Source of the DNA: Saccostrea echinata
Lineage: Eukaryota
Length of the DNA: 64,000 nt
Direction of reading: 5' to 3'
Assembly (NCBI RefSeq): GCF_033153115.1
Contig: NW_026889761.1
Location: 5,456,001 to 5,520,000 of the forward strand
Shown here in pieces: positions 11,603 through 64,000 of this stretch (the first letter of the stretch is position 1; each line of letters begins with the position of its first letter). Position numbers and translations under genes: made by a program. The notes under the pieces are model-generated. The model did no database searches and was not told where the DNA came from. It was given only the letters and a program-made list of their open reading frames with translations.

Positions 11603-11939
11603 TCTTAAATATCTAAAAAAAAAAAGTGTTCACTATTGCATTAAAATGTTACATCTCTACAATATTCTGAATCTGATATATAATTGAAATGAATTAGATC
11701 ATTTCTCATGTATCTCGCATGTTTTATTAGGTTCCAATTCATCTGATGCTTTACTCACTGTTTTAATGTACTTATATACCATTATTATACTTTTTTACTG
11801 TAAAATATCCGTAAAATATGTTGATTATTTAAAAAAAAAAAATCATTATTACAAGGACATATAATCGGGTTCAAACAGCTTCTCTACTCATCCGGTAATC
11901 TAAGATACAGGGACATAGGGACCCTCTTATTGCTTATTA

Positions 11940-12050
11940 CCTACCTACCTACCTAGTCCTTGCACCCGGAGGCACATAGGGCAAGGACTAGGGATTTCCA
12001 TTCTTCTCTGTTCTTAGCTGTCCTCTCCACCTCTCCCCAGGTAAGATTCA
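11940..12050 (-). mobile_element. 5'-truncated RTE-clade LINE 3' end (111 bp)
   Basis: Minus strand reads NLTWGEVERTAKNREEWKSLVLALCASGCKD*, an RTE-type C-terminus, then a (TAGG)n tail. 14-bp TSD CTTATTGCTTATTA; the empty site is present in the paralogous segment at ~48459. Confidence 0.85.
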
Positions 12051-12449
12051 CTTATTGCTTATTATTGCTCACATTTCTAATACAACGTGAACAACTTATT
12101 TCGAAATAACATATCCAAAGAATTTCGAAATAACAGCATAACAGACATGGATATATCTTATCTATAAACATGTGAAATAGATTAAGAATGTGCATTATTT
12201 CAGATTCGCGTTGAGATCTTTAAAACATGAACAATTGTATAAATTTTCCTGTGAAGATGATAAAAAGGTAATGATTTTTAACGTAAGCTAAAATGCTCAT
12301 ACATGATATAAAATTTCTTGATCTTTTTTTGTAATTGTTACAATTAATGTAATTGCACTGTTGCTGTGCTTTATAAACTTATGAATGTTTTCATTTAAAA
12401 AAAATGTATTTATGAACTGGGCAATCATTGTATTTGTTGATTTTATAAC

Positions 12450-58900: not shown

Positions 58901-59628
58901 CCTTCGTTCTATCATCAAGAGAGTTAAACCAAATTAATATAGGTCCTTTCAGATGTAAAAAGCTGCAATGCGGCGGTTTTCCTCTCGTTATTTTTTTTTA
59001 AAACACAGGGAGACTCGAATTCTGATAGTAACTTACGTCCATATTCACTGGCAAACACAGAAAACCTCTGGATCAAAAATTTGTCGGATATAGGCAGTGG
59101 ATTTTGTGTATTAAACCAGCCATAGGTTTATGCTATCTTGGACGGAATACAAGTGTTTCCTCCCAGTCGTCTATGATCACAGGTGTCACAGGTGTCGTTG
59201 AAAGTAAATCTGTAGGTGCTGGAGACACGTAATTTTCTGTTGTAAACATTGTCCATATAGACCAATTATCTCGTTCAATATATATCATTTTTAATTACAA
59301 GAATATATTATATTAAGTGCGAGAAATCGTTTGGTGTTGCAATATTGTTGCTATAGTGTAAATCAATAAAGCATGCATGAACTCAAATTTAATTTTTAAA
59401 ACGGTGATTGCATTTTAATTTCTTGTTAATTTTACAGACGGGTCAGACGCTTCGGGTAACATGTAAGGTGCAACAGATAAAATAGACTACAGTGTATATT
59501 CAGAAAATCATTCAGGTGTAAAAATCACAATTTTGGCTAGGTGAGAATAAAAATGGAAGAACCATATCTTAGTGGAAATAAAGTGTTATACAATTAAATC
59601 ACATTCAGAACTCGTTATGTCGAGCAGG

Positions 59629-62600
59629 ATGTCTGGTGTAGAATTTGGGTCCTCTATGAAAAAAGAATGTTTCCATTTTCAGGAAGGGTATACTTTTGTT
59701 AATCACGGTTCTTTTGGCGCAGTTCCTTTAGTAATACAGGAGAAACAAAGAAGGTAATAATTGTTTTTGTCCATTGTCTTATTAGTATCCAATTTCAAAT
59801 ATTTACATTTGCTGTGTATTTCTACTAAGCCAACTGTGAAATTGTTTGAAAGTCATTTTTGTGTATACTCACGCGTAGAAATATACACGGTGAAACTCGC
59901 GCTAAAGTGACGTCACAATGAGGCTACAGAGACGTAAATAAAAATGTAACGATATAGGGCAGCAAGAAATTCAAATATTGAGTATATTATTGGTGCTTTT
60001 AAACTTGTAAAACGTAAATATAAGGAATGTTTTTAAGTTTAGTGTGAATTATTGGTGTGTAAATCACACAGACTTGCACGTAGGCATATTTTTCATGAAG
60101 CGCTAGCGCGCTTTATGAAATATGCCTACGTGACAAGTCTGTGTGATTTACACACCAATAACTCACACAAAACTTTAAAACATTCCTTAAATATATTTAC
60201 ATTTTACCAATGATTTTCCTTATATGACGATACTAACAAAATCGGCATTTGATTTTCGATGACATGAAGTTGGTCACATGATCAGACTGTTTATGGAAAG
60301 CAAACCACACCATACATTTGGAAGGTCCAGACTGTGACGTCACATGACGTCGTACATGTATGCTATTGATTGATTTCTATAACAAAGTCTAAATAGGTTT
60401 TTTTCCCCTTGTAATACGAACAAAAATATAATACATGTATAAGAAATAATTTTTAGGAAAACAGACAATGTCAGAAATTTGGGATGATAAATATATATAA
60501 TTTTCTTTAAAATGCAATAGAATAGTATTTGTCATCAAATTACAGAATATTATAACATTTGGATGTACATAATATACTCGTAGCAAAAATCTTTCCGAAT
60601 ATCACACATAACATTCTAGTAAGTAGTGAAATCCATCTCCAATGGTTGATTATCATTGCACAAATAACACACTCCTTCACTTCTTTCAACAAACACCAGC
60701 ATTCTGAAAATTTTGACTCGCTTATAGATACCAGATAACAGTTACACGAAAATGAGGTGTCAGGAAAATTTGGTGATCTACAGTCGGTCATTGTAGCAAC
60801 ATCAAAATCCAGTTTGTTCTATCACGATAATTATAGTTCATGGAATTAAGAACCCCTTTTCAATTATTCATTCAGTGTATTTGGTACACTATTAATGTCC
60901 ATCCTGGTTAATTAAACTTTTATTTTATTTTTCTATTAAGTTCACAGTGAATAACTCAAATGAAAATGAAAAAATACATTCTAAGTTTAAACCGTTCATA
61001 TGAAACCCTAGAGGTTTACACGCTTCCGGGAATTTTTTTTTTTTTTTTTAGATTTTTACGGCCGATAAAATTTCATCTTGCGTAATTTAACGATCAAGTA
61101 TTTCATTATATCCACTTTGTTCTATATCATAGTGATGTTGCTTGTATCAGTTTTCTCTAAACCAACTTCATTAATATTTCTAAAAAAAGTACTAGTAATA
61201 AAAATTGTTTAGATCAGCTGTACATTTATTCTTTTCATGATGGCTATTTAAATATTTTCCTGTATTCCTTTTAATATGTTGTTTGTACGCTATTTTCAAA
61301 GTTTCTGACAGACATCTTGTCTGTTATATTTTATTGATGAATCCATTACTTTTTAAATAAAAATTTTTGCTGGCTAGTTTTAAATTTTCCATGGAATCTT
61401 GGGTTTTTCCACTCTGTTGTATATACGTTTAACAAGTGATTTTTTTTCTCGACGTCCTACAGTTATGATTAAGGTTCTACTAAAGGCAGACCTTTGTATA
61501 TATGAAATAATTTGAATATAATTTTGGCACTGAATACTAGATTTTTTTAATATAAAAATTCTGCTACTACAAAGAGCGTATTAATATTCATTTTGTGCTA
61601 GGTAATTCTTAATAGGAAAACTTTAAGTTAAACAGTTTTTTTGTCAACTTCATTATTATGGTTTGCAGGGGATGTAACTCTCAAGTTACAAAAAATTGGA
61701 ACATTAACAATATTTTAAGTTGGCCAATGTTAAAATGCTTTCTTCAAACAGAAGTTTGTCTTTAGTGGAACCTTCAAGCAATATGAGCTACATTTTTGGA
61801 AATTTTATTTTGCAGTTAAAATGTGCTGTTATGATAAATCTATATGATCAATTAGACGAAAATAAAGTATTAAAGTGTTTTAGAAGAAAGATTTCTGTAC
61901 AATGGATTGTATAGTATTATGTACGAAATTAATATTGTACAGGATGACAATAATGTAATTTTGCTTCGATCATACTTTATAAATAGTTCTTCCATTGCAA
62001 ATATGAACAAAAGAAATTTATAAATGTTGCAATAGTTCTCTACAATTTTGCAACAAAAATTTCCGACATCAAAGTTGCAGCTCATATTGCTTTAAACCAC
62101 GGTTTTCGGACCTCGTCTTTGTGTTTTGTTGTATATATTTAACCCCTAATTTTTTGGGTTTTTTTTTGAACATTATAGTGTTTAAATGTTCTTTTTCCAC
62201 TGCGTTTCCAAATTCATACGATCTTTGATTTCTTCTTTAATTTTCTTAGCCTGTCTATACTTGCTGCTCTTTTTGCAACCTTAATTTCACGCTCGATTGA
62301 TCTTGAGTTTCTACCTGTGTCTGGTTAAATGGAACACTTTGAGATACCGAATGACAGAGGATTATGTGCGTCAGAGTATAAGTTAAAGAAATTTAAAACA
62401 TTTAATTTGTTTACAAGAGTTAATATATAATTGTACACTTGATATCACAAAATCAACAGTATTGCTGTATTAACATGTAATAGCACCTGTAGATTTCTCA
62501 CTTCCGCATCGACCGTTAAGAATAAAAAAAAGTTGTTAATACAGAAATTAAGCATCATATTGCCAAAATTATTGCTTGTTACGTCTTTTAAATGTTCTGA

Positions 62601-64000
62601 CAAGTGGAATACCAAATGTTTCTGGTAAATTAACATCTGCATTTATAGACTGAGTCACCATTATTGCAGGCAGATCAATATGTGTCATAAAAAATAAATC
62701 AAAGATTGTTATTGTTCAAAGATTTTAAATGATTTAGGTGTTTCGTTAATTTTTCCATTGCCGTCAAAAAGCATGATTAATATAATTTTGTTTTCTCTTT
62801 ACAGGCTTCTGGATGAGTCAAATAAAAATCCCGATATATTTTTCAGAAAAAGAGAAAAAATGCTTTACTTGGAAGCCAGAGATGTTGCTTCAAGATTTTT
62901 AGGCGCTAAACCGGAAAATTTAGTTTTTGTAACAAATACAACGAAAGGTAGTTTATAGTGAAGAGGTACTTTCTCGTTCATTTCTGTATCATAAAAAATA
63001 TTTTGATGAAAAATCCCATATTCTGAAATATCAATATGATTTGAGAAACAATGGCAATTACATTACCATCTGGAACTCAAAGCAAAGCTCTCGTTATATC
63101 ATAATTGTCAGATATATATTAAAAATGTAACAGCTTTTTAAAAAAAAAAAAAAAAAAAATTAAATCTTACACCCTTACAATGTAACCTGTATTCTTACAG
63201 GAGTAAACTGTATTCTTACAGGTGTAAACTGTGTTCTTTCAGGTGTAAATTGTGTTCTTCGATCTCTGCCTTGGAAGAAAGGAGATGGTATTTTAACAAC
63301 CAATTTCACCTTTCCGGCCAATATCAAGGCTTGTCAAAGATTGACTCAGTATTCGGCTGGTAATAAATACAGAATTGCATATGGTAGAAGTAATGGTGGT
63401 GGAATCATAACACAATAGAAACATACCGGTACAAATAATAAAAAAAAATTTTATTTGGGACATTTTTACCAATTCGAGATACGGCTTCCTATTAGGCACG
63501 AAGCAGAAGTGGTGAGAAATATGACGTCATATCTCGACAAATTCAGCAATATTCGATTAATTGGTTTTACTAGGTACGTCATCCAATTCCTTCTTTTCAA
63601 CCTTAGAAAAAATGCCACTGCTTATTAGAGCTATTTTTTAATTTGAATATTTTTCTTCATTTCTACATTAGATCACATAAGTAGTCCAACGGCTCTGGTA
63701 TTCCCTCTGAAAGAGATGATAGCTGAATGCAGAAAAAGAAATGTTCTCATTTTAGTAGACGGAGCCCATGCTTTAGGACAGATAGCGGTGAATCTTGAGG
63801 ACCTAAGACCTGACTTCTACATAGGGAACTTCTACAAATGGTTATATTCACCTCGTGGGTGTGCTGTACTGTGGGTGGCAGGGGAACATCAAACATGGTG
63901 TACTCCGCTTGCAACATCAGTTATGTACAGGGAAGGCTTTCAGTTAGAGTTCATGATGCAAGGAACGCGTGACAATATACCTTATTACTTAGTACCTGCC
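59629..64000 (+). pseudogene. Second Egt2/LCD-like lyase copy, partial at the window edge, exon 4 damaged
   Basis: Exons 59629..59753, 62805..62947, 63243(or 63201/63222)..63359, ~63459..63573, 63672..>64000. The exon-4 acceptor is TTGG instead of GTAG, and exon 4 has a 4-bp insertion at ~63557-63560. Confidence 0.8.
59799..60195. mobile_element. Giant-hairpin element in lyase-2 intron 1
   Basis: Palindrome 60021-60190 centred on GCGC-TAGC-GCGC; the hairpin is absent from the paralogous intron at ~22190-22275. Confidence 0.6.

What the first reader, a model, noticed from the sequence alone, without database searches (positions are those of the whole stretch)
11843..64000. Triplicated head-to-head cassette: innexin channel plus Egt2/LCD-like sulfur lyase
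Seen: three tandem units (A ~11843-22810, B ~29365-48350, C ~48380-end), each with a minus-strand innexin and, ~5.1-5.6 kb beyond its TATA box, the first exon of a plus-strand PLP C-S lyase. Only unit B has both genes intact; A keeps only the channel, and C has lesions in both. Inference: a large-pore channel divergently paired with a thiol/sulfide-generating enzyme could be a co-regulated make-and-release module (H2S/persulfide or thiohistidine). It may equally be passive co-duplication of neighbours.
Basis: partly seen in the sequence, partly recalled or inferred. Interest (0 to 1): 0.78.

Follow-up and report, generated by a model that had tools for sequence, protein, structure and literature searches.

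The report
Triplicated innexin–lyase gene pair in oyster
A 17-19 kb piece of rock-oyster chromosome carrying two neighbouring genes, a gap-junction channel and a vitamin-B6 enzyme, was copied three times in a row and the copies are decaying one by one; this looks like ordinary gene duplication, not a special make-and-release machine.

Summary
The window (Saccostrea echinata, contig C12) has three head-to-tail units: A 11843-22813, B 29363-48007 and C 48382-65795, which ends 1.8 kb past the window. Each has a minus-strand innexin and a plus-strand Egt2/LolT-like class-V PLP enzyme, whose first exon lies 5.13-5.56 kb from the innexin's putative TATA box.

- **Unit B:** both genes are intact. Public run X4 holds contigs that splice lyase B exons 3-7 exactly.
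- **Unit A:** it keeps the innexin and the last 27 codons of lyase exon 1. A young multi-copy transposon sits at the break.
- **Unit C:** the innexin has a CAG>TAG nonsense codon. The lyase has lost an acceptor AG and gained a 4-bp insertion.

The interpretation as a co-regulated make-and-release module is not supported:
- Five other lyase copies in the genome have no innexin nearby.
- Two more innexins of the same array have no lyase.
- Unit A kept the channel without the enzyme.
- Spliced innexin contigs occur in 4 of 4 runs, spliced lyase B contigs in 1 of 4.
- A second, 99%-identical duplication next door copied an innexin with a LINE.

The one point in favour is that S. cucullata appears to carry both genes on the same contigs.

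Verdict: ordinary birth-and-death tandem duplication. The scan had already noted this lyase and the neighbouring innexins separately.

The parts
11843..22813 (.). Unit A of the tandem triplication
   Evidence: Colinear BLAST blocks with B and C. The left edge 11843 pairs with C 48382.
13417..16928 (-). Innexin A, intact. Putative TATA 16928-16920; non-coding exon ending 16858; coding exons 14819-13923 and 13797-13417.
   Evidence: 100% identical to P0002 / XP_061176319. TATA and donor (inferred).
22056..22136 (+). Lyase A: remnant of exon 1 (codons 16-42), with no start codon and no later exons
   Evidence: tblastn; sequence. About 770 bp present in C are missing here.
23189..29362 (.). Young multi-copy transposable element filling the A/B junction, where lyase A exons 2-7 and the start of unit B should be
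   Evidence: More than 25 genomic copies at 93-97% identity over query positions about 375-6549. Its end abuts the unit B start at 29363.
29363..48007 (.). Unit B
30083..34492 (-). Innexin B, intact. Putative TATA 34492-34484; non-coding exon ending 34425; coding exons 31498-30602 and 30460-30083.
   Evidence: 100% identical to P0001 / XP_061176320. Pfam Innexin 127 bits. Four hydrophobic segments and Cys pairs.
35329..35569 (.). Locus-specific conserved non-coding block, also at A 20441-20704 and C 57293-57532. Function unknown; a candidate lyase regulatory element or 5'UTR exon.
   Evidence: 83-90% identity among the three units. Only partial matches elsewhere in the genome.
40053..47806 (+). 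Lyase B, intact class-V PLP enzyme (408 codons). Exons: 40053-40177, 44886-45028, 45220-45336, 45425-45535, 45672-46033, 47235-47393, 47597-47806.
   Evidence: tblastn with P0184 and P0030. Splice sites. GT..AG joints for exons 3-4-5-6-7 in contigs of run X4, with 0 mismatches in exon 5. PF00266 hit.
48382..64000 (.). Unit C, which continues to about 65795, 1.8 kb beyond the window
49769..54183 (-). Innexin C, with a premature TAG at codon 247 (plus-strand 50444-50446) and otherwise in frame. Putative TATA 54183-54175.
   Evidence: Three-way alignment; ORF list. C-specific contigs exist in runs X1-X3, but all contigs over 50446 read CAG.
59629..64000 (+). Lyase C. Exons 1-5 lie in the window and exons 6-7 at 64880-65590. 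The exon-4 acceptor is lost (GG at 63457-63458) and there is a 4-bp insertion at about 63556-63559.
   Evidence: B/C alignment; tblastn. dN/dS 0.30 against B.
332..1759 (+). A fourth innexin of the same subfamily (Inx0), with no lyase partner. It belongs to a separate 98.8%-identical tandem duplication together with a LINE (1896-4719).
   Evidence: P0010 / XP_061177096. Pfam RVT_1 and endonuclease. Duplication shown.

Best explanation
This is a tandem segmental triplication. Two neighbouring, divergently oriented genes lay inside a local innexin array. One is a divergent 'innexin-11-like' channel gene. The other is an Egt2/LolT-like class-V PLP enzyme gene. A 17-19 kb segment holding both was copied head-to-tail twice, most likely by unequal or non-allelic recombination between interspersed repeats (inferred).

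The copies then evolved by birth and death. All stayed under purifying selection for most of their history. Later, unit A lost its lyase to a deletion with a transposon at the break. Unit C picked up a nonsense codon in the innexin and two splice or frame lesions in the lyase. Unit B remains intact and its lyase is expressed.

The two genes were duplicated together because they are neighbours, not because they work together.

Shown: the three units, their lesions, their divergence, the splicing of lyase B, and the lack of innexin-lyase linkage at the paralogous loci.

Inferred: the recombination mechanism, the order of events, and the absence of functional coupling.
For: - **Colinear units.** Identity is 70-93%.
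- **Innexin divergence.** dS is 0.21 for A-B, 0.25 for A-C and 0.13 for B-C, with omega 0.19-0.26.
- **Lyase divergence.** B-C dS is 0.154 with omega 0.30.
- **Lesions.** They differ between units and are independent of one another.
- **Transposon at the break.** A multi-copy element lies exactly at the A/B break.
- **The locus duplicates segments whatever they contain.** An adjacent 98.7-98.8%-identical duplication copied an innexin with a LINE and a satellite.
- **No linkage at paralogous loci.** Exon-5-type lyase matches occur at 7 places: 2 in this window, 3 on C14 and 2 on C25. Of 23 innexin matches, none is on C14, and the C25 ones lie 3.2 Mb away.
- **RNA-derived contigs.** The spliced innexin joint occurs in 4 of 4 runs. 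Spliced lyase B joints occur in 1 of 4, at depth 3-8.
- **No compact shared promoter is evident.** The innexin TATA lies 5.1-5.6 kb from the lyase ATG, and the spacer differs between units through insertions and deletions.
Against: - In S. cucullata the orthologous lyase (P0030) and innexins (P0003, P0008) sit on contigs of identical length, 416,390 bp. A second innexin (P0186) and a partial lyase (P0205) sit on contigs of identical length, 24,726 bp. The linkage, and perhaps the co-duplication, is therefore shared by two species.
- Both genes of unit B are intact and constrained.
- A 241-bp locus-specific block is conserved in all three spacers. If the lyase starts there, the two promoters in unit B would be only about 1 kb apart.
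- Contigs cannot measure expression level, so co-expression is untested rather than refuted.
Confidence: 0.85

Rival explanations
1. Functional module. The innexin forms a large-pore (hemi)channel that releases or passes on a thiol, persulfide or thiohistidine made by the neighbouring PLP lyase. The pair is co-regulated from the shared upstream region and was amplified as a unit for dosage.
For: - Head-to-head orientation in all three units.
- Apparent linkage in S. cucullata on two contigs.
- Both B genes are intact and constrained.
- A conserved locus-specific spacer block exists.
- The enzyme's closest solved relatives include the C-S lyase Egt2.
- The literature passages read say the metazoan ovothiol lyase is unidentified outside Hydrozoa (PMC8433421, PMC8623360).
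Against: - No innexin lies near the five other lyase copies.
- Innexins of the same clade lack a lyase.
- Unit A kept a constrained innexin without a lyase.
- Spliced lyase B occurs in 1 of 4 runs against 4 of 4 for the innexin.
- Two of three lyase copies and one innexin copy are broken, which argues against selection for pair dosage.
- The His before the PLP lysine, present in 213 of 224 homologues, is Tyr here, so even the chemistry is uncertain.
- FGE-sulfatase (OvoA-type) loci lie on other contigs.
Confidence: 0.07
2. Assembly artefact. The units are alleles or haplotigs of one locus wrongly laid in tandem.
For: Oyster genomes are highly heterozygous. The neighbouring 98.8%-identical duplication is within the range where false duplication is possible. 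RNA contigs show mosaic B/C haplotypes.
Against: - The units differ by 7-30% in sequence.
- They differ in transposon content, lesions and length, far beyond allelic divergence.
- Innexin dS is 0.13-0.25.
- B-specific and C-specific contigs co-occur in single runs.
- RefSeq names A and B as separate genes.
Confidence: 0.03
3. Adaptive amplification of the innexin alone, with the lyase as a hitch-hiker being purged.
For: Five innexins of one clade lie within 62 kb. Every unit keeps a complete innexin reading frame apart from one codon in C, while two of three lyases are broken. Innexin B-C identity (92.8%) is higher than in the flanks (77-86%), which suggests gene conversion or constraint.
Against: There is no test of positive selection or dosage benefit. 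Omega of 0.19-0.26 shows constraint only. Innexin C carries a stop codon in the reference. This is a refinement of the best explanation rather than a true alternative.
Confidence: 0.05

Closest known systems
Tandemly arrayed genes evolving by birth and death after unequal crossing-over (general model; recalled, not from a call)
   Same: Head-to-tail colinear copies, graded divergence, independent pseudogenisation, traces of gene conversion, and interspersed repeats at the unit edges.
   Different: The repeat unit carries two unrelated genes in divergent orientation. A second duplication of a different age and content lies next to it.
Innexin family (Pfam PF00876), invertebrate gap-junction and hemichannel proteins
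   Same: Pfam score 127 bits against a cut-off of 25. Four hydrophobic segments. Two Cys in each presumed extracellular loop.
   Different: This is a divergent clade. Genomic Pfam scores are 113-138 bits for the six C12 loci. Of the other 17 genomic matches, the 16 spanning most of the profile score 235-350 bits, and the remaining one is a partial 63-position match at 85 bits. The N-terminus is short: profile position 2 aligns to about residue 11. The coding sequence is split by one phase-0 intron.
Egt2 (hercynylcysteine sulfoxide lyase, PDB 5UTS/5V12) and LolT (PLP Mannich cyclase, PDB 8DL5/9AZA)
   Same: Class-V fold-type-I PLP enzyme. E-values are 3e-41 to 4e-39 with P0189. The lysine of FYKW aligns with the Schiff-base lysine of LolT (K236).
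   Different: An animal, intron-rich gene of 407-408 aa, against 474-501 aa. Tyr replaces the His before the lysine that 213 of 224 homologues carry. The substrate is unknown.
Bidirectional-promoter gene pairs (usual definition: start sites under about 1 kb apart; recalled)
   Same: Head-to-head orientation, retained in every unit.
   Different: 5.1-5.6 kb separates the innexin TATA from the lyase ATG. The spacer holds transposon fragments and differs between units. The lyase start site is unmapped.

Membership tests
Tandem segmental duplication (birth-and-death array) | Two or more head-to-tail colinear copies spanning both genes | tested here: met
   Three units with ordered blocks at offsets of about 16.7-17.6 kb (A to B) and 17.7-19.7 kb (B to C).
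Tandem segmental duplication (birth-and-death array) | Copies are paralogues, not alleles | tested here: met
   7-30% nucleotide divergence, different transposon content and lesions. dS 0.13-0.25. B- and C-specific contigs occur in the same runs. Junction-spanning DNA reads were not examined.
Tandem segmental duplication (birth-and-death array) | Independent decay of copies | tested here: met
   A: lyase deleted. C: innexin nonsense codon, lyase acceptor loss and 4-bp insertion. B: intact.
Innexin (PF00876) | Pfam domain above the gathering score | tested here: met
   127.4 bits against 25 for the large coding exon (the ATG exon) of innexin B.
Innexin (PF00876) | Four transmembrane segments with two cysteines in each extracellular loop (feature list recalled) | tested here: met
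   Hydropathy peaks at about 25-43, 107-125, 167-190 and 275-295. Cys45/Cys63 and Cys237/Cys254.
Innexin (PF00876) | N-terminal helix of usual length | tested here: inconclusive
   The Pfam alignment starts at profile position 2 at about residue 11 of the protein. The short N-terminus was also noted by earlier finding s1-808056. No structure was predicted.
Innexin (PF00876) | Forms a channel | not testable with these tools
   Needs electrophysiology or dye transfer.
Class-V aminotransferase, Egt2/LolT-like clade | PF00266 above the cut-off | tested here: met
   Exon 5 alone scores 29.3 bits against 21.5. Genomic matches score 37.1 and 37.3 bits.
Class-V aminotransferase, Egt2/LolT-like clade | Schiff-base lysine in place | tested here: met
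   The K of FYKW aligns with the K of LolT's CHKW at chain residue 258 of 8DL5. My arithmetic: 258 minus the 22 extra N-terminal residues gives K236 (PMC13351049 passage).
Class-V aminotransferase, Egt2/LolT-like clade | His immediately before the lysine | tested here: not met
   213 of 224 motif-bearing homologues have H. The Saccostrea proteins have Y and C. virginica has S. 42 of the 266 proteins had no motif match.
Class-V aminotransferase, Egt2/LolT-like clade | C-S lyase activity on a histidyl-cysteine sulfoxide, or H2S release from cysteine | not testable with these tools
   Needs an enzyme assay.
Bidirectional-promoter or co-regulated gene pair | Start sites close together (under about 1 kb; recalled definition) | tested here: inconclusive
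   Innexin TATA to lyase ATG is 5128, 5561 and 5446 bp. The lyase start site is unmapped. The conserved 241-bp block could lie about 1 kb from the TATA in unit B only.
Bidirectional-promoter or co-regulated gene pair | Co-expression | tested here: inconclusive
   Spliced innexin in 4 of 4 runs and spliced lyase B in 1 of 4. Contigs show presence only, not level.
Conserved functional gene cluster | Linkage recurs at paralogous loci or in other species | tested here: inconclusive
   Not met within the genome.

The most novel reading that the evidence does not exclude
The innexin-lyase adjacency is an old, selected pairing in oysters. An N-terminally shortened innexin clade would form a metabolite-permeable channel. 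It would be co-regulated, through the conserved spacer block, with an Egt2-like enzyme that is the long-sought animal C-S lyase of ovothiol (or another thiol) synthesis. On this reading the unit was amplified as a make-and-release cassette, and unit B is its working copy.
Probability: 0.05. Interest if true: 0.7.

Novelty: new member of a known kind. Interest (0 to 1): 0.2.

Why it matters
As it stands, this is a clean, datable example of segmental tandem duplication and differential pseudogenisation in a bivalve genome. It is useful for annotation in three ways:
- Lyase C and innexin C should probably be flagged as pseudogenes or polymorphic.
- The database model P0189 needs non-canonical junctions.
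- Innexin has an unrecognised non-coding first exon.

It would matter more only if the pairing proved functional. In that case it would link a channel to thiol metabolism and give a handle on the unidentified animal ovothiol lyase. That question belongs mainly to the lyase family as a whole, not to this triplication.

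Tried and rejected
**Ideas tested and rejected or left open**
- **Lyase C.** I took it for intact because P0189 is 100% identical to its exons. The nucleotide alignment showed that the model needs a missing AG and a weak alternative donor.
- **Cross-species synteny.** C. virginica, Magallana and Ostrea could not be tested.
- **Link to OvoA.** FGE-sulfatase loci lie on other contigs.
- **Literature.** The search was badly framed and uninformative. In one search none of the 15 papers listed (of 294 holding at least two of the three terms) describes an innexin duplication in oysters, judged from titles and abstract starts. 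One search listed six papers holding 'Egt2', 'ovothiol' and 'invertebrate'. I judged them by listing only and saw none proposing an animal Egt2-like ovothiol lyase.
- **Copy assignment at 50446.** It could not be resolved, because the contigs there are B-like or mosaic.
- **Timing of the A split.** The tree places A outside the clade of B, C and the S. cucullata copies (98/97). AU p = 0.033 against S. echinata monophyly. I chose that group after seeing the tree, and the S. cucullata branch is long, so the timing remains open.

Full report
**Source and setting.** The window is G000:C12:5456001-5520000 of a 923-Mb assembly. Its innexin ORFs are 100% identical to Saccostrea echinata RefSeq proteins XP_061176320 (P0001) and XP_061176319 (P0002). 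There are no N runs.

**The observation.**
- Self-BLAST gives 29 off-diagonal matches of 300 bp or more. Pairwise BLAST of the three regions gives ordered, same-strand blocks.
A 11843-11939 pairs with C 48382-48473. A 12113-12493 pairs with C 48771-49161. A 12688 pairs with B 29363. A ends at 22813. B 48007 pairs with C 65795, which is 1.8 kb past the window; the flanks were fetched.
- Identity is uneven. Over the innexin it is 92.8% for B-C and 85-86% for A-B and A-C. In spacers and lyase introns it is 70-91%.

**Innexins.**
- Each unit has a minus-strand innexin with two coding exons joined in phase 0.
- Pfam Innexin scores 127 bits against a cut-off of 25.
- Innexin B has four hydrophobic segments and the Cys45/63 and Cys237/254 pairs.
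- A and B are intact. C differs by a single CAG>TAG change at codon 247 (plus-strand 50444-50446), before the last transmembrane segment.
- A block about 550 bp long, conserved in all three units, holds a TATATAA. About 70 nt downstream is a GTGAGT donor. A TTTTCAG acceptor lies 9 nt before each ATG. The gene therefore probably has a short non-coding first exon and a 2.0-2.9 kb 5'UTR intron. This is inferred; no RNA was laid there.

**Lyase.**
- Exon 5 matches Pfam Aminotran_5 (29.3 bits against 21.5).
- The one big protein search supplied full-length relatives. A word search with C. virginica P0184 supplied oyster paralogues. tblastn with these maps seven exons.
- Lyase B runs from 40053 to 47806. 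It has canonical sites throughout and 1227 coding bases, or 408 codons, the same length as P0184.
- Lyase A is only codons 16-42 of exon 1 (22056-22136), with the ATG and about 770 bp gone.
- The 6.5 kb between A and B is almost wholly one multi-copy element. It has more than 25 copies at 93-97% identity and ends exactly at 29362. The rest of lyase A and the start of unit B were therefore lost at a transposon-associated break.
- Lyase C has all exons. Exons 6-7 lie beyond the window at 64880-65590. The exon-4 acceptor reads GG instead of AG, and exon 4 has a 4-bp insertion that shifts the frame if the normal donor is used.
- The database protein P0189 (407 aa) is 100% identical to the C exons. 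It bridges these points with junctions that have no canonical sites (my inference).
- I did not build a spliced lyase B protein. All work on B was done exon by exon.

**RNA-derived evidence.**
- One run search found nine partial holders. The kind of every listed run is a guess by the tool: five are guessed RNA and four guessed DNA.
- I laid Logan contigs of X1-X4 on 45201-51200. These come from at most three samples and two studies.
- X4 holds contigs with GT..AG joints at 45336/45425, 45535/45672, 46033/47235 and 47393/47597. They have 0 differences over exon 5, at depth 3-8. Lyase B is therefore transcribed and spliced as modelled.
- X1 has only unspliced low-depth pieces of lyase B. X2 and X3 have none.
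- The innexin intron joint (50148/50290) occurs in 4 of 4 runs.
- Contigs identical to C where C differs from B (X1 record 5, X2 records 15 and 16, X3 record 23) show that innexin C is transcribed.
- At 50446 all four runs read G, giving CAG. The contigs there match B or are B/C mosaics. The nonsense codon may be allele-specific, its transcripts may be depleted, or it may be an error. I cannot tell which.
- Contigs show presence only, not level.

**History.**
- By my own Nei-Gojobori script, innexin dS is 0.21 (A-B), 0.25 (A-C) and 0.13 (B-C), with omega 0.19-0.26.
- Lyase B-C dS is 0.154 with omega 0.30. dS is higher in exons 1-3 (0.28) than in exons 4-7 (0.10).
- In exons 2-3, B is closer to S. 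cucullata P0030 (94% and 89% aa) than to C (85% and 73%). In exons 5-7, B and C are closest. This is a mosaic suggesting gene conversion or unequal ages.
- A protein tree of 18 innexins puts A outside a clade of B, C and the two S. cucullata copies (98/97). The AU test gives p = 0.033 against S. echinata monophyly, but I chose that group after seeing the tree.
- The triplication is therefore old, possibly as old as the species split. The lesions are late.

**Is the pairing meaningful?**

Evidence against:
- Exon-5-type lyase matches occur at 7 places: 2 here, 3 on C14 and 2 on C25.
- Of 23 genomic innexin matches, 6 are on C12, none is on C14, and the C25 ones are 3.2 Mb from the lyases.
- Two more innexins of the same clade, at 332-1756 and at 9.8-11.2 kb upstream of the window, have no lyase. 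They belong to a 98.7-98.8%-identical duplication that carried a LINE and a 434-bp satellite instead.
- Unit A kept a constrained innexin without a lyase.
- The spacer differs between units through insertions and deletions. B and C align for only 29 bp upstream of the lyase ATG.
- OvoA-type FGE-sulfatase loci are on other contigs.

Evidence for:
- In S. cucullata the orthologous lyase and two innexins lie on contigs of the same length, 416,390 bp.
- A second innexin (95% aa identical) and a second, partial lyase (94% in exon 5) lie on contigs of the same length, 24,726 bp.
- A 241-bp locus-specific block is conserved in all three spacers.

**What the enzyme resembles.**
- The best solved relatives of P0189 are LolT (8DL5/9AZA, E 3e-41 to 2e-40) and Egt2 (5UTS/5V12, E 2e-39 to 4e-39). 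The identity of 8DL5 as LolT, with K236 as the Schiff-base lysine, comes from a passage of PMC13351049.
- The lysine is conserved. The preceding His, found in 213 of 224 motif-bearing homologues, is Tyr in Saccostrea.
- Passages of PMC8433421 and PMC8623360 state that no OvoB has been found in metazoans other than Hydrozoa. That concerns the whole family and gives no support to coupling with the innexin.

**Verdict.** The passive co-duplication reading is supported at about 0.85. The make-and-release module remains a low-probability possibility, at about 0.05-0.07. This is an ordinary phenomenon, well documented here.

Noticed in passing
window 1-7221 and the 11.5 kb before the window (G000:C12:5444477-5454547): A second, very young tandem duplication (98.7-98.8% identity) copied an innexin, a LINE (RT plus endonuclease) and a 434-bp satellite. 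At this identity it could also be a falsely duplicated haplotype.
   Followed up: partly
window 23189-29362: A non-coding multi-copy element of about 6.2 kb, with more than 25 copies at 93-97% identity across many contigs. It carries internal 165-bp tandem repeats and sits exactly at the A/B break.
   Followed up: partly
window 45672-46033 (lyase exon 5) and homologues: The His before the PLP lysine (213 of 224 homologues) is Tyr in both Saccostrea species and Ser in C. virginica. This marks the window-type oyster subfamily as distinct from the 398-aa 'hercynylcysteine sulfoxide lyase-like' paralogues on C14 and C25.
   Followed up: partly
window 35329-35569; 20441-20704; 57293-57532: A locus-specific 241-bp non-coding block is conserved at 83-90% in all three units. 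It abuts the innexin upstream block only in unit B. Its function is unknown.
   Followed up: partly
window 59629-64000 and beyond (protein P0189): The database's 407-aa model of lyase C bridges a lost acceptor and a frameshifting insertion with non-canonical junctions. No corresponding model of the intact lyase B appeared among the hits.
   Followed up: partly
window 50385-51151: RNA-derived contigs from other individuals are mosaics of B-type and C-type innexin bases. One carries a 14-nt deletion at 50791. This suggests gene conversion or further unassembled copies or alleles.
   Followed up: partly
window 46800-47200, 48000-48800, 49200-49400: Very high contig depth (hundreds to thousands) over short interspersed repeats at the B/C junction. 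Copies of the same elements occur at 43525-43808, 44524-44716 and 68315-69160.
   Followed up: no
protein P0029 (Argopecten irradians, 806 aa) and cluster members P0180-P0183: A scallop protein carries two complete lyase domains in tandem. Four independent run assemblies give products of 806-807 aa on 2.6-3.2 kb contigs, so it is probably a real fusion of tandem duplicates.
   Followed up: no
window 21521-21859 and 58300-58689 (minus strand): Decayed gag-like ORFs (weak zf-CCHC hit, E 0.008) lie in the spacer block shared by units A and C but missing from B.
   Followed up: no
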